IMG/VR virus record: IMGVR_UViG_3300034072_000926
Span: 248,001-312,000 of that record
Strand: one strand, 5' to 3'
DNA length: 64,000 bases
Shown here: positions 36,521 through 62,935 of the stretch, piece by piece
Numbering within the stretch: position 1 is the stretch's first letter
How the letters are laid out: every line of letters begins with the position of its first letter
Translations under genes and position numbers: made by a program
The notes under the pieces: generated by a model
What the model saw: the letters and a program-made list of their open reading frames with translations, nothing else
What the model was told of the DNA's origin: nothing
Database searches by the model: none

Positions 36521-36605
36521 GCGCCTGTGGTGAAATTGGTAGACGCGCTGGTTTTAGGTACCAGTATCGAAAGATGTGGGGGTTCGAGTCCCTTCAGGCG
36601 CACCA
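36521..36605 (+). tRNA. tRNA-Leu (anticodon UAG), CCA encoded
   Basis: Acceptor GCGCCTG/CAGGCGC, anticodon loop TT-TAG-GT, long variable arm, GTTCGA, ACCA end. Confidence 0.95.
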
Positions 36606-36648
36606 CCCTTTAAAGCTTTAGATCGGATTACCGTTAGAAGGCTTTAAG

Positions 36649-36792
36649 ATGTCGAGCGATACTATTCTGCACGTTGTCAGCGCGTTTGCATTTGCTGGCA
36701 TGATCTACTGGGGTTGGTCACAGATTCCTCCCGAAGATCCTGAAATCGTTAAGGCCCGCGCCGAACACGGCAAGGTCGATTTGAACGACTAA
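36649..36792 (+). CDS. 47-aa single-TM protein (not in ORF track)
   Basis: MSSDTILHVVSAFAFAGMIYWGWSQIPPED...; TAATG coupling to next ORF. Confidence 0.5.
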   Translation: MSSDTILHVVSAFAFAGMIYWGWSQIPPEDPEIVKARAEHGKVDLND

Positions 36793-36920
36793 TGGACACC
36801 GTCCATAAAGTCTTGTTTGTGGTGTTAATCAGTTTAGGTGTGTTTCTCATCTGGGCAACATATCAATTAATTAAACCCACTACGTTCTATAATATCGATC
36901 CTTCTGAGGACGATATTTAG
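36792..36920 (+). CDS. 42-aa single-TM protein (not in ORF track)
   Basis: [29 protein letters not shown]... Confidence 0.5.
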
Positions 36921-36924
36921 AATT

Positions 36925-36998
36925 GGTCCCGTAGCTCAGCTGGATAGAGCGTCTGCCTCCTAAGCAGAAGGTCACTGGTTCGAATCCAGTCGGGATCA
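36925..36998 (+). tRNA. tRNA-Arg (anticodon CCU), no encoded CCA
   Basis: Acceptor GGTCCCG/CGGGATC, loop CT-CCT-AA, GTTCGAATC. Confidence 0.93.
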
Positions 36999-37006
36999 CA
37001 GATCGA

Positions 37007-37732
37007 ATGAAGATCTTCCCCGAAATCACATTTCATCACTTTCCCAAAGATAGGTCTTTGGTTGAGAAGGTGATTCGTAAATTCTACATTCCGGAATTTG
37101 CAAGGTTTCGTTCCATCGGTGGATATGAGAAATACTGCCGTAGGATGAAGAAGTCCTTTCCTGTCCGTTGGTTTATCAGCGATAGTCTACCCGACTTCTG
37201 GCACTTCAAAGTCAAACAGCCCTACTATAATGTAAGGGCTTGGTATCGTTATCGGTTCACCGAAAAGTATCATATCGTAAAGCTAGACGTCAAACCTGGC
37301 TATATGGATCCTGATGATCGCATCTTGCATGTGAACTTTCAGATCCTCAAAGACTTTGTTGAGATTGAGTTGGGTGCGATGCATGATGCATCAGAAGCCA
37401 AAGACAACGGCAAGATTCTAGGTTCGTTTTCTAAACTTTACCGAAAGTATAAGAAGAAGAACATTCGCAACCCGGAGGGCGGTGTTCAGTATTTGGATTG
37501 GGAGATTGCTGAGTCAGGTTCTTCCCATCAGGCACACGCGGCTGCTGAGAAGAAGGCAATTTACCTGTGGTGGACTGAAGAACGCCCTAATCGTCTTGAC
37601 GTCTATGATAATCCATACATGGATAATGAAACCAACTACAGGGCTATGAATCGTCTCGAGAGTTTCTATTACGAACAAGACCAAGAAATGCTAAAGCGTT
37701 TGATTGATATCAGAAGTAGCATTTGGATGTAA
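37007..37732 (+). CDS. Hypothetical protein
   Basis: 241-aa ORF between tRNAs. Confidence 0.75.
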
Positions 37733-37762
37733 AAAGATATTGCAATGCAGATTATCCATGTG

Positions 37763-37770
37763 TATAAATA
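37763..37770 (+). promoter_or_regulatory. T4-type late promoter upstream of tRNA-Pro
   Basis: Perfect TATAAATA 32 nt before the tRNA. Confidence 0.55.
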
Positions 37771-37801
37771 AACACATAGAGCAGCACATTGCTTTATACC
37801 T

Positions 37802-37875
37802 CGGGGAGTAGCGCAGTCTGGTAGCGCGCTTGCTTTGGGAGCAAGATGTCGCAGGTTCGAATCCTGTCTCCCCGA
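37802..37875 (+). tRNA. tRNA-Pro (anticodon UGG), no encoded CCA
   Basis: Acceptor CGGGGAG/CTCCCCG, loop TT-TGG-GA, GTTCGAATC. Confidence 0.95.
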
Positions 37876-37964
37876 CATAGTTGAAGTGGTCCCACTGACG
37901 CAAGTCATGCACCCTCAACCCTCCTAGGCCAGTTGGTCGGATTAGTCCCACCCATTGAGCTGGA

Positions 37965-42365: not shown

Positions 42366-43163
42366 TTAGATTCCTTTGTTGTCGCCATAAATGCCAAGGA
42401 GTTCCTTGACCACTGGGTGACGCTCAACATCCTGACGAGCAAACTTGATCACATCAATATGCTTCGAACCCTGAAAACGATTCAGGAAGTCCGCAAGACC
42501 ATTGTCTGCGCCACGGTCGCTCTGCGCCAAGTCGCCGGTGACTACCATCTGCGAACCTTCACCAATACGGGTAAGGATCGACAGTAGGGAGTTTGGCGTA
42601 GTGCCCTGCGCTTCGTCAACTAGGATATATGCGTTCTTGAAGGTACGACCACGGATGAATGCAATAGGCACCATTTCAATGATGTTCTCTTCCAACATGG
42701 TCTGAATCTCAATCTGAGTGTAATATTCAGCAAACACGTCGAGAACTGGCATCATCCAAGGAGTCATCTTCTTCAAGATGTCACCTGGGAGGTAACCAAT
42801 GTCCTTATCGTCAACTGCTACGTTTGGACGAGTGATAACAATCTTCTCTACAAGACCTGCCTTGAAGCACTTGATCGCGTGTAGGGTTGCAAGAAGAGTC
42901 TTACCGGTTCCTGCTGGGCCAACAGCAAATGTCACATATTTGCTGGAATCTTCTAGGCTTGCTAGGAGATTTTCCTGAGTCAGGTTACGTGGGACAATGT
43001 CCACGCGCTGCTTCTTTGGCTTTTGAGGGAAGTTTAGCTCAATAACATTCGAGGTGCGATCCTGCTGCTGGTAACGTCCGCCACGGGCGCTTGGAGCACC
43101 AATGTTACGGTCTGCACGAGGATTAGCGCGATTTGCGCCCTTAGCACGGGGTTGTTTAGCCAC
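42366..43163 (-). CDS. phoH: PhoH-family ATPase
   Basis: GPAGTGKT, 'ITRP', 'GYLPG', 'RGRTF', 'DEAQ', 'TRIGE..GD..QSD'; GTG 43163 with GGAGG RBS. Confidence 0.95.
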   Translation of the reverse strand: MAKQPRAKGANRANPRADRNIGAPSARGGRYQQQDRTSNVIELNFPQKPKKQRVDIVPRNLTQENLLASLEDSSKYVTFAVGPAGTGKTLLATLHAIKCFKAGLVEKIVITRPNVAVDDKDIGYLPGDILKKMTPWMMPVLDVFAEYYTQIEIQTMLEENIIEMVPIAFIRGRTFKNAYILVDEAQGTTPNSLLSILTRIGEGSQMVVTGDLAQSDRGADNGLADFLNRFQGSKHIDVIKFARQDVERHPVVKELLGIYGDNKGI

Positions 43164-43257
43164 TTTCGACCTCCACAATGAGGGTTGTTATTGCGGGCTG
43201 CTCGAAAGTATTTAATGGTTTAGGTTTCTGAAAAGTGCGTATGTTAAGTCATGGGAA

Positions 43258-43279
43258 TGGGCCACTAAATAGCGGCCCA
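43258..43279 (-). terminator. Terminator-like hairpin
   Basis: TGGGCCGCT-ATTT-AGTGGCCCA on minus strand. Confidence 0.5.
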
Positions 43280-43285
43280 CCCTAC

Positions 43286-47777: not shown

Positions 47778-48314
47778 TTACTTTAAGAACTCTCTCACAT
47801 CGAGATCGAACTTGAGGCTGTCAACTTTATGAACGCCAATGAGGTATAGGATATAGCTCGCAACACTCGAACCACGACCCACACCCCATACGATGCCACG
47901 TTCCCTAAAGCTGGCGATCAGATAGATCAAAACCTTGAGAACTTGTGTCATTTCACGCTCCTCAAATAGCAGCCATTCTTCTGCCACCCGAGTCATCTGA
48001 ACTTCTGTCTCACAACGTTCAATCAGCCATTCCAACACGTCAATGCTCTTGAAGGGTTCGGGAACAAACCATTCACTCTGGAATGAGGCATCCCATTCCT
48101 CAACTGAAACACTTGGTTCCTGATAGATAGGAATCTGATCCTGTGGATGATCAAGTTCCTTGCAAAGTTTGTTGAAACGATGAATGTCAGGGTTGTCGAT
48201 GGCTTGAAGCTCTCCCGACAACTCTTGACCTTTCATCAACAGGTCAATGAGGCCATTCTTATCGAAAGCCACATTGCCCCATTGATCTAGCTGACGACCG
48301 TCAAGCTCTTTCAT
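47778..48314 (-). CDS. Short DNA polymerase III alpha (DnaE)-like fragment
   Basis: 'GIVWGVGRGSSVASYILYLIGVHKVD'. Confidence 0.8.
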   Translation of the reverse strand: MKELDGRQLDQWGNVAFDKNGLIDLLMKGQELSGELQAIDNPDIHRFNKLCKELDHPQDQIPIYQEPSVSVEEWDASFQSEWFVPEPFKSIDVLEWLIERCETEVQMTRVAEEWLLFEEREMTQVLKVLIYLIASFRERGIVWGVGRGSSVASYILYLIGVHKVDSLKFDLDVREFLK

Positions 48315-49012
48315 TCCGTCTTGCCTCCGTCAATCACCTTGGGACGGAACTCAGGACGAACAACCACATTACTGGTCGTTTGCGGCAAAGCCATCTGTTC
48401 AGCAATAAAGCTCAGACTATACGCCCACATCGGCGGTGTGCTAATGTCATCTTCCTCGTCTGGACTGATATCCAGGGTTGATGCATCATTTCGATTCCAC
48501 CAGGACTTGCTGAAATAGTTTCTCTCGCCGAGCCATTCTTCATCCGTCGGGAAGGTCTCGCCAGGAGTCCCGCCAACAAACATGAATGACAACCCGCGTC
48601 CATCGGACGATTCAATTTCACAGCTATGAAAATCAAAGGCGCCGTTAGACAATGCCTTGAACTTACAAAGGAAGAGTTCACACAAGAGCGCGTCTGTTGG
48701 AACTTCCGGAGTGAGGATGATCATATTAGTGGTCTCCGGTCGGGTTTCTCCCATGAAACAACTAATAGCCCATTCATTATCGGCATCGATGATAATGGAC
48801 TTGTCTATAACCTTCTTAACCCAATAGTCCATCTTGGCGAGAGCTATTTCCATTTTGGCGGAATAGTCATCAGTGTCTTCTCCCAAGGTGCTAACATCGA
48901 CCTTGAGTTTGATGGTTGCTGGGGAGAGTTTCTGTCCGATGATACGGGTAGCCTGGAACTCATGGCGCAGGCTTACGAACAGATGATTAGGTAGAATGTC
49001 TTCTTCGTCCAT
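48311..49012 (-). CDS. Conserved hypothetical protein (possible QueD/T-fold-like)
   Basis: 233 aa, coupled to the DnaE fragment; fold is a guess. Confidence 0.7.
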   Translation of the reverse strand: MDEEDILPNHLFVSLRHEFQATRIIGQKLSPATIKLKVDVSTLGEDTDDYSAKMEIALAKMDYWVKKVIDKSIIIDADNEWAISCFMGETRPETTNMIILTPEVPTDALLCELFLCKFKALSNGAFDFHSCEIESSDGRGLSFMFVGGTPGETFPTDEEWLGERNYFSKSWWNRNDASTLDISPDEEDDISTPPMWAYSLSFIAEQMALPQTTSNVVVRPEFRPKVIDGGKTE

Positions 49013-49027
49013 TTTAGTCCCATTGAG

Positions 49028-49178
49028 GACGCAGGACTCTAGGCGCGGAAAGCGCGATATGAGGTAATTGCTGGGCCCAGCAACACAACTACAAGATTTG
49101 AGCAGCCCTGTTGAGCATCCTGTTGTCGTTCGTTGTATTTAGTGCCTTGCAGTTAAGCCTCACCTAGTAGCCTGCGTC
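49028..49178 (-). ncRNA. Candidate multibranch structured RNA
   Basis: Nested helices 49028-35/49171-78, 49039-43/49163-67, 49060-64/49158-62 plus internal hairpins. Confidence 0.5.
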
Positions 49179-49230
49179 GTAATCAAAGCTATCTTAGCAA
49201 ATAGGATAGACAGGAGTCATTATGTGAATA

Positions 49231-49596
49231 TCACTTCTTGCTAGGCTCGAGGTATTCTTTGTTGAATGTCGGCGTTGGCAAGGTCACATTCTTAGTAACA
49301 GCGGGCTTGACAACCTTAGTGTTGGTGTCTTCAACCTCACTCTTACTCTTTACGAAATCAGGATCCGATTCAGTAGTTTCAGGGAACATGGCTTGCATGG
49401 CCTCGAACTGCTGCTTCTTCATGCGCTCCATTTTCTCTTCCTCAATCATCTCCAACATCCAATGAAGTTGGTTGATGATCTCAGTGCTTGAACCCCACAT
49501 ATGCGCCTTTGACAGGCGCTTGTGTAGAGCTGAAGTCTTTTCGAGCAACTCGTCGTCGCTCATATCCTTAAAAGAGAGAAATGGATGATCAATCAA
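49231..49596 (-). CDS. Hypothetical protein
   Basis: 121 aa 'MIDHPFL..MSDDELLEK'. Confidence 0.7.
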   Translation of the reverse strand: MIDHPFLSFKDMSDDELLEKTSALHKRLSKAHMWGSSTEIINQLHWMLEMIEEEKMERMKKQQFEAMQAMFPETTESDPDFVKSKSEVEDTNTKVVKPAVTKNVTLPTPTFNKEYLEPSKK

Positions 49597-49997
49597 AGGT
49601 CGCCTTCTTTCCTGTTCTCGCTGCGCGAGATTTCGAACTTGCCGCCTGGATAACGAGCTTCCAGCTTACGGACGTTCTCTTCAATAATATCGTATGGATT
49701 GAGGTTCAGAGCCATACAAGCATTTGCCCAATACCACATCACGTCACCAAGTTCACGCTTCATGTGAAAGATGTTGTCTGCGTCATATGGCTTGCCCTGG
49801 AACGTGATCTTCTTCACGATTTCCATAAACTCGCCAGCTTCTGCCGACAGACCATCAGCCGCAGTATGGAGGCGTTCCACGTTGCAACCCTGCTCATACA
49901 GTTCTTCGATACGAGCTAGGAACGCAGCCTTATCCTTAGAGGGCTGGCTAGTCACACCGTCGACGAAAGTCAGGTATTGCTCGAGAAAGTTTTCCAT
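49593..49997 (-). CDS. MazG-like NTP pyrophosphohydrolase
   Basis: 'GLSAEAGEFMEIVKK..RELGDVMWY..N..KL.ARYP'. Confidence 0.88.
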   Translation of the reverse strand: MENFLEQYLTFVDGVTSQPSKDKAAFLARIEELYEQGCNVERLHTAADGLSAEAGEFMEIVKKITFQGKPYDADNIFHMKRELGDVMWYWANACMALNLNPYDIIEENVRKLEARYPGGKFEISRSENRKEGDL

Positions 49998-62523: not shown

Positions 62524-62787
62524 TTACTTCTTTGGGGTCACGCTCGAGAATGCGGGATTGGTTACCTTGTGCATTGCCCCACAAGTCGCGCAATAAAACT
62601 CCACCTGTCGGAAAATCATGTTCTCAGACTCGAATGAGGTCTTTGTATTGCACTTCTGGCATGTGAAAACCCAAGGCCCTAAAAGCATCTGCGGATTGTT
62701 TTTGACCGTCGAAACGGCGGGCTTCATGGCTAAATCGCCCCTTGATGCTTGAACAGCATTAGGAAAATGGATAATATTGTTGTCCAT
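62524..62787 (-). CDS. Zinc-ribbon protein
   Basis: CQKC..CATC; TAAATA at 62827. Confidence 0.7.
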   Translation of the reverse strand: MDNNIIHFPNAVQASRGDLAMKPAVSTVKNNPQMLLGPWVFTCQKCNTKTSFESENMIFRQVEFYCATCGAMHKVTNPAFSSVTPKK

Positions 62788-62935
62788 AGCCTAAATCACT
62801 CTTTACTCCTACTGGCTGCTCCCAGATATTTAGTGAGTGATTTCCAAAAGATTTCCATACACTTTTATTCCCAATCTAGGTGCTATAGGAATATTGCAAT
62901 CCTGAGATACGCTCGCTAACAAGGTATCGGAAAGG

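What the first reader, a model, noticed from the sequence alone, without database searches (positions are those of the whole stretch)
49013..49180. 150-nt multibranch RNA with a self-complementary GGGCCC loop and a switchable RBS
Seen: a 218-nt gap contains nested helices GACGCAGG/CCTGCGTC (49028-35/49171-78), CTAGG/CCTAG and TGAGG/CCTCA (3' strands contiguous), a GCGC hairpin, an ACAA/TTGT arm, and the perfect palindrome TTGCTGGGCCCAGCAA (49068-83), which as RNA is a 5-bp stem with a self-complementary hexaloop. On the minus strand the GGGA RBS of the 49012 gene can pair (49016-20) with 49034-38 or 49027-30, both part of or adjacent to the outer helix, so the folds are mutually exclusive. Inference: an undescribed riboswitch-like leader for the T-fold-like/DnaE-fragment operon, or a stand-alone RNA that multimerises by loop kissing.
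Basis: partly seen in the sequence, partly recalled or inferred. Interest (0 to 1): 0.7.

Follow-up and report, generated by a model that had tools for sequence, protein, structure and literature searches.

The report
Conserved jumbo-phage leader RNA with antisense loop
The gap holds a real, evolutionarily conserved folded RNA at the start of a late phage transcript, and one exposed loop is complementary to, and co-varies with, the first 8-11 bases predicted for two other late messages of the same phage, which points to RNA-RNA cross-talk rather than a metabolite switch.

Summary
The RNA is on the minus strand. It is single-copy in a 465-kb Atu_ph07/Phosso-like jumbo phage and matches no Rfam family.

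The conserved core (49144-49062) has three parts:
- a T4-type late promoter, TAAATA;
- a 12-bp stem (P2) holding a mini-hairpin and a 7-nt bulge, UGCUCAA;
- the palindrome, which folds as a 6-7-bp stem with a GGCC tetraloop (P3), not a hexaloop.

A covariance model finds this core ahead of the same T-fold gene in 14 further fetched loci (about ten distinct phages). Of all base-pair cells, 97.8% pair, and 14 of 23 pairs show double changes. Divergent forms occur in Atu_ph07, Phosso and others.

New result: the loop GGGCUGCUC is complementary to GAGCAGCC(C) placed exactly 5 nt after TAAATA, the predicted +1, at the phoH-like gene and a Zn-ribbon gene. The loop and these sites change together in L011 (GCCGCUC/GAGCGGC) and Atu_ph07 (GCUUCUCAC/GUGAGAAGC). 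Most other differences are G·U-compatible.

Best reading (about 0.5): a late-mRNA leader with an antisense loop. A riboswitch or a kissing dimer has no support. The RBS switch is inconclusive.

The parts
49136..49141 (-). T4-type late promoter motif TAAATA (CTAAATAC here). The predicted start of the late transcript is about 49130.
   Evidence: Of 126 TAAATA copies in the genome, 79 lie in the 12% that is intergenic, mostly 20-35 nt before a start codon. The motif is invariant in every relative of the element and is TATAAATA in Phosso and L059. Atu_ph07 encodes a homologue of the gp55 late sigma factor. The +1 position is inferred from T4, not mapped.
49085..49129 (-). P2: a 12-bp stem (49129-49117 with 49097-49085) that encloses mini-hairpin P2a (49116-49113 with 49108-49105) and the bulge.
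   Evidence: MFE folds of ten leaders. Covariance-model alignment A8: 10 of the 12 P2 pairs change on both sides.
49098..49108 (-). Conserved exposed motif GGGCUGCUCAA. The bulge UGCUCAA (49104-49098) is unpaired; GGGC is the 3' strand of P2a. This is the proposed antisense seed.
   Evidence: Invariant or nearly invariant across the clade. It is complementary to the sites at 43195-43203 and 62814-62821. Among all leader 8-mers, only those of this motif have complements beside a TAAATA.
49067..49084 (-). P3: the palindrome, folded as a 6-7-bp stem with a GGCC tetraloop (49077-49074), directly abutting P2.
   Evidence: The stems vary (UUGCUG, GUUACUG, UGGCUG, GGUUG, UAGCU, GGCU, AAAUUCU) while GGCC is constant. 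G·U pairs occur in L008 and L011.
49043..49055 (-). P4: a small G+C-rich hairpin of variable sequence.
   Evidence: Present with different sequences in L004-L007, L055, L071, L105, L110, L059 and in metatranscriptome contigs. Absent in L133 and L008.
49158..49178 (-). 5' strands of the outer helices (GACGCAGG, CUAGG, UGAGG in RNA sense). They lie upstream of the late promoter, so they are present only in read-through transcripts.
   Evidence: They covary with the 3' strands: GACAUAGG/CCUAUGUC, ACGUAGGAAACA/UGUUCCUACGU, GAUGCAGAAUACG/CGUAUCCUGUAUC, GGACGACGAG/CUCGCGUCC. No terminator lies between the upstream gene and the element.
49028..49064 (-). 3' strands of the outer helices: CCUGCGUC 49035-49028, CCUAG 49043-49039, CCUCA 49064-49060.
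49010..49030 (-). Translation start region of the T-fold gene: SD GGGA 49021-49018, ATG 49012-49010, and a local hairpin GUCC (49030-49027) with GGAC (49020-49017) that overlaps the end of the outer helix.
   Evidence: equivalent hairpins in L004-L008, L133. Accessibility calculations are inconclusive.
48311..49012 (-). First gene of the unit: a 233-aa protein with a QueD/PTPS-like T-fold, followed by a 178-aa DnaE-like fragment (47778-48314).
   Evidence: AF2 mean pLDDT 85. Foldseek hits QueD/PTPS at E 2.5e-5 with about 10% identity. No His or Cys is among the invariant columns. Pfam DNA_pol3_alpha matches the neighbouring gene.
43195..43214 (-). Partner site C: TAAATA (43214-43209), 5 nt, then GAGCAGCCC (43203-43195). 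This is the predicted 5' end of the late mRNA of the PhoH-like gene (GTG at 43163).
   Evidence: The equivalent site lies 3.6-7.6 kb downstream of the element in every relative with enough flank.
62814..62832 (-). Partner site A: TAAATA (62832-62827), 5 nt, then GAGCAGCC (62821-62814). This is the predicted 5' end of the late mRNA of an 87-aa four-Cys Zn-ribbon protein (62524-62787).
   Evidence: It is less constant than site C: one mismatch in L008 and absent in L011.

Best explanation
The element is the structured 5' leader of a late transcription unit in a T4-related jumbo phage. The unit carries the T-fold protein, a DnaE-like fragment and a GroES-like gene.

Shown:
- A gp55-type late promoter motif (TAAATA) sits inside the element.
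- About 5-10 nt after it begins a conserved two-hairpin module: P2, which displays the bulge UGCUCAA next to a mini-hairpin, and P3, which carries a GGCC tetraloop.
- After the module come a variable hairpin and a small hairpin over the Shine-Dalgarno sequence.
- An outer helix pairs sequence upstream of the promoter with sequence just before the SD. Only transcripts reading through from the upstream genes can form it.
- The displayed motif GGGCUGCUC(AA) is complementary to GAGCAGCC(C). That sequence occupies the predicted first 8-9 nt of the late mRNAs of the PhoH-like gene and a small Zn-ribbon gene on the same strand. The motif and these sites have changed together in diverged phages.

Inferred:
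- The leader, or a fragment processed from it, base-pairs through this loop with the 5' ends of those mRNAs. The geometry is loop to 5' end, as in IS10 RNA-OUT/RNA-IN. The logic is that of leader-embedded phage antisense RNAs such as P1 c4 and P4 CI.
- This pairing couples expression of the three late units.
- The direction of the effect is unknown. One possibility is activation of phoH, by releasing a weak pairing between its 5' end (AGCC) and its start-codon region (GGCU).
- P3 is most likely a structural or protein-binding hairpin.
- The outer helix adds T4 gene-e-style discrimination between read-through and late transcripts.
For: Structure:
- Folding z-score -3.45.
- The same P2/P2a/P3 architecture appears in independent MFE folds of ten leaders.
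- Model R1 gives 79-101 bits in window, L004-L008, L133, L055, L071, L105, L110, L059, L112 and L095, and 31 bits in L011.
- In alignment A8, 97.8% of cells pair against 34-52% when the partner is slid. 14 of 23 pairs change on both sides, and 0 of 500 shuffles reach any of the measures.
- The element is single-copy in the genome.

Promoter:
- TAAATA is enriched in intergenic DNA and positioned before start codons.
- A gp55 homologue is encoded in Atu_ph07.
- T4 late promoter biology is as reviewed in PMC3014915.

Trans complementarity:
- In the own genome, both complements of GGCUGCUC that lie beside a TAAATA sit at offset 5. Random 8-mers give two or more such hits at a rate of 3.5e-4.
- There are two sites per genome at TAAATA+5, on the element's strand, in G002, G003, G009-G011 and Phosso. 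G001 has both once a U at position 7 is allowed. Reversed-pattern controls give none.
- Cognate changes: L011 has GCCGCUC with GAGCGGC; Atu_ph07 has GCUUCUCACAU with AUGUGAGAAGC and GUGAGAGGC.
- G·U-compatible differences occur in L004 (both sites), L010, the Phosso group and Atu site A.
- An automated scan of 40 loci finds the phoH-side site in every locus that has the element and enough flank.
- The two element-less relatives whose phoH leaders I read start differently: GUGCGGCA and GCGCGCAC.
- The motif always lies in the P2 loop or bulge, although its distance from TAAATA varies from 20 to 33 nt.
Against: - No transcript ends are mapped, so +1 is inferred from T4.
- There is no direct evidence of RNA-RNA pairing.
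- Only two clearly independent compensatory events (L011 and the Atu lineage) support trans covariation. The rest are wobble-compatible transitions.
- L008 site A has an A·C mismatch, L008 site C has a bulged A, and L011 has no site A.
- Full pairing must open P2a and part of P2. Cofold gives only about -7 kcal/mol net and does not separate cognate from non-cognate pairs.
- The target site is 30-40 nt upstream of the start codons, so a simple RBS block is excluded.
- A dsDNA motif recognised by a co-evolving protein would give the same co-variation.
- Metatranscriptome contigs hold the core but do not prove transcription.
Confidence: 0.5

Rival explanations
1. The shared motif is a double-stranded DNA operator. 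A phage DNA-binding protein, for instance the Zn-ribbon protein whose own promoter carries the site, binds GAGCAGCC at +1 of two late promoters and binds the inverted copy in the leader DNA. The sites co-vary because the protein's specificity drifted. The RNA structure would then be an unrelated stability or translation element.
For: Identical motifs sit at a fixed promoter-relative position at two promoters. One of those promoters belongs to a small Zn-ribbon protein, which would fit autoregulation. The variants are genome-specific. RNA-RNA energies are unimpressive.
Against: - The leader copy is always inverted.
- It lies at a variable distance (20-33 nt) from its promoter but always in the loop of a covarying RNA stem.
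- Differences between the leader copy and the target copies are mostly G·U-compatible: about six such differences against one mismatch and one bulge.
- In the Phosso clade every target carries U where the leader carries G.
- The complementarity starts at the predicted +1.
Confidence: 0.2
2. The element is a purely cis-acting leader. The P2 bulge and the GGCC loop bind a protein or a small molecule, either autogenous control as with T4 gp43 or gp32, or a riboswitch. This would control translation or stability of the T-fold/DnaE-fragment operon. The complementarity to other leaders would be incidental.
For: Loop nucleotides are conserved within covarying stems. An SD hairpin lies downstream. T4 has a precedent in a hairpin operator upstream of the gene 43 RBS. 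The downstream protein has a pterin/7-deazapurine-enzyme fold.
Against: - No match to any Rfam riboswitch or leader.
- The architecture is two simple hairpins without a junction pocket.
- The T-fold protein lacks the conserved His and Cys of QueD/PTPS.
- This model does not explain the genome-specific co-variation with the sites at TAAATA+5.
Confidence: 0.15
3. The main function is T4 gene e / soc / I-TevI-style control that depends on the transcript. Read-through transcripts would form the outer helices and hide the ribosome-binding site. Late transcripts from the internal promoter would lack the 5' strands and be translated, or the reverse. This reading is compatible with the best explanation for the core.
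For: A late promoter is nested inside a covarying outer helix whose 3' strand abuts the SD. There is no terminator upstream. In the window, L007 and L071 the SD is predicted to be less accessible in the long form: 0.24-0.33 against 0.48-0.60. The T4 precedent is described in PMC3014915.
Against: - In L005, L133 and L059 the prediction is reversed. In L004, L055, L105 and L110 there is no difference.
- The far-upstream anti-SD partner is not conserved.
- The model does not explain the sequence-invariant P2 bulge and GGCC loop. These persist in phages that lack the outer helix (Atu_ph07, and L137, where a terminator hairpin precedes the promoter).
Confidence: 0.25
4. The element is a stand-alone RNA that dimerises through the self-complementary loop of the palindrome.
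For: GGCC is self-complementary and invariant. Metatranscriptome contigs cover mostly the core.
Against: - The loop is only 4 nt in the CUGGCCAG variants, too constrained for a canonical kissing complex.
- No terminator follows P3 or P4.
- The element always lies directly ahead of a gene, with an SD.
Confidence: 0.05

Closest known systems
IS10 RNA-OUT / RNA-IN antisense pairing (own knowledge)
   Same: The loop of a stable stem-loop is complementary to the extreme 5' end of the target mRNA.
   Different: Here the two RNAs are encoded 4-14 kb apart on the same strand, so the system is trans-encoded. The complementarity is only 8-11 nt and does not reach the target's ribosome-binding site. The antisense loop sits in an mRNA leader.
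Phage P1/P7 c4 and P4 CI leader-derived antisense RNAs (Rfam C4 family; own knowledge)
   Same: A structured RNA embedded in a phage transcript leader carries exposed loops complementary to two other sites on phage transcripts.
   Different: There is no sequence or structure match to the C4 model. The targets here are the 5' termini of separate late mRNAs, not sites within the same operon. Processing into a free RNA has not been shown.
T4 gene e / soc / 49 / I-TevI translational control by nested late promoters (PMC3014915)
   Same: A TATAAATA-type late promoter lies inside a helix. Long early or middle transcripts can therefore fold it, while late transcripts lack its 5' strand. The helix ends next to the SD.
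   Different: The outer helix does not itself cover the SD. The predicted effect on accessibility is inconsistent. A 65-nt conserved module that T4 lacks lies between the promoter and the SD.
T4/RB69 gene 43 translational operator (PMC3014915)
   Same: A small hairpin with a conserved loop lies upstream of the RBS of a replication-module gene in a T4-related phage.
   Different: The sequence and architecture differ. The downstream protein is a T-fold protein, not a polymerase. No protein partner is known.
HIV-1 DIS-type kissing hairpins (own knowledge)
   Same: A hairpin has a self-complementary G+C loop.
   Different: The DIS has a 9-nt loop with a 6-nt palindrome. Here the conserved loop is a 4-nt GGCC.

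Membership tests
Any Rfam 15 family (riboswitches, leaders, sRNAs, ribozymes, C4 antisense RNA) | Match to the family covariance model | tested here: not met
   cmscan with permissive filters on 48800-49450 gave only two snoRNA hits, at E 3.9 and 6. At gathering threshold the whole window gave only three tRNAs.
Riboswitch (as a kind) | A ligand-binding aptamer whose fold changes with a metabolite | not testable with these tools
   This needs in-line probing or a binding assay. The architecture is two plain hairpins.
Riboswitch (as a kind) | An expression platform with mutually exclusive folds that involve the SD or a terminator | tested here: inconclusive
   A local SD hairpin overlaps the 3' strand of the outer helix. 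Predicted SD accessibility in the long versus the short RNA is inconsistent among 13 phages. There is no terminator.
T4-type nested-late-promoter translational control | A late promoter (TATAAATA-like) inside the inhibitory structure | tested here: met
   TAAATA at 49136-41 lies between the 5' strands of the outer helices and P2. It is conserved in all relatives and is a genome-wide promoter-like motif.
T4-type nested-late-promoter translational control | The helix of the long transcript sequesters the SD or AUG, and the late transcript is open | tested here: inconclusive
   the long form is less accessible in the window, L007 and L071, more accessible in L005, L133 and L059, and equal in L004, L055, L105 and L110.
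Trans-acting antisense RNA (seed pairing) | Complementarity to targets, conserved and co-varying across genomes | tested here: met
   Runs of 8-11 nt in every genome that has the element and enough flank. Cognate variants occur in L011 and Atu_ph07. Other differences are G·U-compatible.
Trans-acting antisense RNA (seed pairing) | The seed is displayed single-stranded in a stable structure | tested here: met
   UGCUCAA is the unpaired bulge or loop of P2 in all folds.
Trans-acting antisense RNA (seed pairing) | Physical pairing and a regulatory effect on the target | not testable with these tools
   Cofold energies are modest and not specific. EMSA, RIL-seq and compensatory mutants are needed.
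Kissing-loop dimerisation hairpin (DIS-like) | A loop large enough (at least 6 nt of palindrome plus flanking bases) to form an intermolecular helix | tested here: not met
   Relatives with CUGGCCAG leave only a 4-nt GGCC loop.
Intrinsic terminator / attenuator | A G+C-rich hairpin followed by a U tract | tested here: not met
   No terminator-like site in 48900-49400. The tails after P3 are not U-runs in most relatives.

The most novel reading that the evidence does not exclude
Atu_ph07/Phosso-like jumbo phages run a small RNA-RNA regulatory network among late transcripts. A conserved two-hairpin module at the 5' end of one late mRNA uses its exposed loop to capture the 5'-terminal 8-11 nt of the phoH and Zn-ribbon late mRNAs. 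The partners co-evolve. The pairing changes the stability or translation of one or both partners, for example by opening a closure between the 5' end and the start codon of phoH mRNA. This would be a trans-acting mRNA-leader antisense system in a lytic T4-related phage. I did not find one described for T4-related lytic phages in Rfam 15 or in the few papers I looked at.
Probability: 0.45. Interest if true: 0.75.

Novelty: new variant of a known kind. Interest (0 to 1): 0.62.

Why it matters
Structured regulatory RNAs of jumbo phages are almost unexplored. This motif is supported by covariation and is absent from Rfam. It occurs in the 15 loci matched by the covariance model, plus divergent forms in about nine further loci (roughly 15 distinct phages), in soil and wastewater phages, including two cultured ones (Atu_ph07 on Agrobacterium and Phosso on Sinorhizobium). 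Direct experiments are therefore possible.

If the loop-to-5'-end pairing is real, lytic T4-related phages coordinate late genes post-transcriptionally through mRNA-mRNA contacts. It would also give the first regulatory handle on phage PhoH, a very widespread phage gene whose function is unknown.

Even if the DNA-operator rival is right, the work defines a late-promoter-proximal operator and its regulon.

Tried and rejected
- **Rfam, both thresholds:** nothing.
- **tRNA or tmRNA in the gap:** none.
- **First protein-pattern scan of IMG/VR with a single protein:** found nothing. Alignments were needed.
- **DNA pattern GGCTGCTCAA...CTGG..CCAG in IMG/VR:** mostly chance hits. Besides the three phages already in hand, seven further loci proved real once scored with the covariance model.
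- **A second copy of the element, or an sRNA gene at window 43209:** rejected. That site is the 40-nt leader of the PhoH-like gene.
- **A conserved upstream ORF in the leader:** rejected. The AUG in P2 is absent in L008 and L133, and the frame shifts in L005 (sequences).
- **A pseudoknot between the GGCC loop and GGCU of the motif:** not conserved. Atu_ph07 and L137 lack the partner.
- **An invertible segment between the inverted 9-mers:** rejected. Leader and sites have the same relative orientation in all assemblies.
- **Restriction-site avoidance:** GGGCCC is under-represented (32 found against 102 expected), but this explains nothing here.
- **RNAduplex and RNAcofold cognate versus non-cognate energies:** not discriminating.
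- **Duplex z-scores for the outer helix:** modest, -1 to -3 in the core clade and not significant in L133, L008 and L011.
- **SD accessibility, long versus short transcript:** inconsistent.
- **Metatranscriptome contigs:** they show the core in RNA libraries with different flanks, but give no strand or ends.
- **A partner site for the reduced L198 leader:** not found in its 33%-complete contig.

Full report
**Setting.** The window is bases 248001-312000 of a 465-kb IMG/VR virus record. Its nearest named relatives are Sinorhizobium phage Phosso (469 kb) and Agrobacterium phage Atu_ph07 (490 kb). Genes around the finding are on the minus strand. In order they are a MazG-like gene (49593-49997), a 121-aa ORF (49231-49596), the 218-nt gap, a 233-aa ORF (48311-49012), a 178-aa DnaE-like fragment, and further on a GroES-like gene. 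The 233-aa protein has no Pfam or PHROG match. Its invariant residues include no His or Cys, so it is probably not a QueD-type enzyme.

**The observation.** The gap folds better than all 200 shuffles on either strand. Nothing in Rfam 15 matches, and no tRNA lies in the gap.

**Conservation.** The T-fold gene was used to fetch syntenic loci from IMG/VR, JGI metagenomes and a 5.8-billion-protein collection.
- Where the gene is preceded by a gap, the gap contains in order: (i) TAAATA; (ii) a stem, P2, enclosing a mini-hairpin and an unpaired stretch with CUGCUCA; (iii) directly abutting it, a hairpin, P3, whose stem varies but whose centre is always GGCC.
- The distance from TAAATA to the GGCC centre is 56-66 nt in all but Phosso (79 nt).
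- Among the closest relatives the core is nearly base-for-base identical, while the adjacent protein is only 58-71% identical and the flanks differ.
- A covariance model built from seven sequences scored 79-101 bits in 14 loci and 31 bits in L011. It recovered seven further loci among 119 mostly spurious pattern hits.
- On the resulting alignment 97.8% of cells pair, against 34-52% when the partner is slid. 14 of 23 pairs change on both sides, and no shuffle reaches the observed values. That alignment is fitted to the model, which flatters it. However, independent MFE folds of each leader give the same architecture.
- Frequent G·U pairs fix the strand as the gene-sense (minus) strand.
- Divergent but recognisable versions occur in Atu_ph07 and its relatives (L012, L164, L165, L168), in the Phosso group (L001, L181, L190), and in L010, L137, L161 and L169. 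L198 has a reduced version without P3.
- In a large sister clade the T-fold gene overlaps the upstream gene, and there is no element.
- The element is single-copy in its genome.

**The TAAATA is a promoter motif.** Of its 126 copies in the genome, 79 lie in the 12% that is intergenic. They are mostly oriented toward a gene and sit 20-35 nt before its start codon. Atu_ph07 encodes a homologue of the T4 late sigma factor gp55. T4 late promoters are TATAAATA, and Phosso and L059 carry exactly that here. In L137 a terminator-like hairpin with a U-run immediately precedes the motif.

The conserved module is therefore the 5' end of a late transcript with an unusually long leader (about 90-195 nt). 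Placing +1 six nucleotides after the motif is an inference from T4 and is not mapped here.

**The outer helices.** In relatives both strands change together. Examples are GACAUAGG/CCUAUGUC; a 14-bp version in L005; ACGUAGGAAACA/UGUUCCUACGU; GAUGCAGAAUACG/CGUAUCCUGUAUC; and GGACGACGAG/CUCGCGUCC. No terminator separates the upstream gene from the element, so read-through transcripts can form this helix and late transcripts cannot.

This is the layout of T4 genes e, soc, 49 and I-TevI. Predicted SD accessibility in the long versus the short RNA differs in sign between phages, so I cannot say which form is translated better.

**The new lead.** While listing TAAATA sites I saw GAGCAGCCC, the exact complement of the conserved GGGCUGCUC, 5 nt after a TAAATA at window 43209. 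This is the 40-nt leader of the PhoH-like gene.
- A second copy, GAGCAGCC, again 5 nt after a TAAATA, precedes an 87-aa four-Cys Zn-ribbon gene at 62524-62787.
- Of all 8-mers in the leader, only those of the loop motif have complements beside a TAAATA. A random genomic 8-mer has two such hits with frequency 3.5e-4.
- The arrangement repeats in every relative that has the element and enough flank. One site lies 3.6-7.6 kb downstream (phoH). Where the contig reaches, there is usually one site 9-17 kb upstream, or about 1 kb upstream in the L008 and L011 lineages. The sites are on the element's strand, at offset 4-5, and reversed-pattern controls give no hits.
- Where the loop differs, the sites differ to match. 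L011 has loop AGGCCGCUC and site GAGCGGCCU. Atu_ph07 has loop GCUUCUCACAU and sites AUGUGAGAAGC and GUGAGAGGC.
- Other differences are nearly all G·U-compatible. L004 site C is GAGCAGUCC and site A is GAGCAGCU. The L010 loop is GGCUGCUU. The Phosso-group targets are GAGCAGU, opposite G in the loop.
- The exceptions are L008 (a bulged A at phoH and an A·C mismatch at the Zn-ribbon gene) and L011, whose Zn-ribbon leader lacks the site.
- Two relatives that lack the element start their phoH leaders differently.
- In Phosso a further complementary copy (GAGCAGUGCC) lies in cis after P3.

**Interpretation.** The motif always sits in the loop or bulge of a covarying RNA stem, although its distance from the promoter varies from 20 to 33 nt. 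Complementarity begins at the predicted +1 of the targets, and mismatches are wobble-biased. On these grounds I favour RNA-RNA pairing between the leader loop and the 5' ends of the phoH and Zn-ribbon late mRNAs.

The geometry resembles IS10 RNA-OUT/RNA-IN. The logic resembles the leader-embedded antisense RNAs of P1 (c4) and P4 (CI). The element is not a member of those families, since it fails the Rfam model test.

What the pairing does is unknown, because the site is 30-40 nt upstream of the target start codons. In several phoH leaders the 5' AGCC can pair with GGCU at the start codon. Antisense capture of the 5' end could therefore activate translation. That pairing is only 4-5 bp and may be incidental.

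Thermodynamic models give a modest net gain (about -7 kcal/mol) and no cognate specificity. The case therefore rests on comparative evidence, with only two clearly independent compensatory events.

The main rival is a dsDNA operator for a co-evolving protein, possibly the Zn-ribbon protein itself. It predicts the same co-variation and cannot be excluded without experiments.

**Expression data.** Three wastewater metatranscriptome runs carry short contigs that match only the conserved core (about 49066-49142) and then diverge. Their downstream flanks form P4-like hairpins of different sequence. This widens the family and is compatible with expression. Contigs carry no strand or end information, and DNA carry-over is possible.

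**Verdict.** The riboswitch and kissing-dimer readings are not supported. The nested-promoter design and SD hairpin are real, but their effect is unresolved.

Noticed in passing
whole genome G000; for example window 40605/40629 (G000 288605/288629), also G000 69150/69171 and 140726/140741: TAAATA behaves as a genome-wide late-promoter motif: 79 of 126 copies are intergenic. Several occur as back-to-back divergent pairs inside inverted repeats (CTATTTACC...GGTAAATAG), which suggests compact bidirectional late promoters.
   Followed up: partly
window 43262-43283 (minus strand), just upstream of the phoH late promoter; the same in L004 and, with another sequence, in Atu_ph07: A G+C-rich hairpin (UGGGCC...GGCCCA) carries TAAATA of the opposite strand in its loop. 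It may be a terminator combined with an antisense late promoter.
   Followed up: no
window 62524-62787 (-): An 87-aa protein with two CxxC pairs (Zn-ribbon), conserved in Phosso, L008 and L011 relatives. Its late leader carries the same 5' motif as phoH. It is a candidate regulator.
   Followed up: partly
window 48311-49012 (-) and 47778-48314 (-): A T-fold (QueD/PTPS-like) protein without the catalytic His and Cys always precedes a 173-178-aa fragment that matches only the start of the DnaE palm domain, usually adjacent but with one or more small genes between in some relatives. The published 'DNA polymerase III alpha' of Atu_ph07 (gp316) is this short fragment, not a full polymerase.
   Followed up: partly
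window 49212-49233 (minus strand) and homologous places in L004-L007, L055, L071, L105, L133: The gene upstream of the element ends in a conserved tandem stop, TAATGAC or TAGTGAC. In several phages a C-rich anti-SD-like stretch follows, which can pair with the SD of the T-fold gene in read-through RNA.
   Followed up: partly
L001 3290-3315 (Phosso leader, after P3): Phosso carries an extra cis copy of the target sequence (GAGCAGUGCC). In MFE folds it pairs with the loop motif, as if the trans partner had been internalised.
   Followed up: no
window 36521-37876 (+): A cluster of three tRNA genes, Leu(TAG), Arg(CCT) and Pro(TGG), lies on the strand opposite to the surrounding genes.
   Followed up: no
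L137 1100-1240: In an AT-rich relative the element (terminator, GATAAATA, P2 with GGACUGCUCAA, P3 AGGCUGGCCAGCCU) precedes an extra small gene inserted ahead of the T-fold gene. The element therefore marks the head of the transcription unit, not the T-fold gene itself.
   Followed up: partly
genome G000: GGGCCC is three-fold under-represented (32 found against about 102 expected). GGCC and CCGG are mildly under-represented (about 0.7 of expectation).
   Followed up: no
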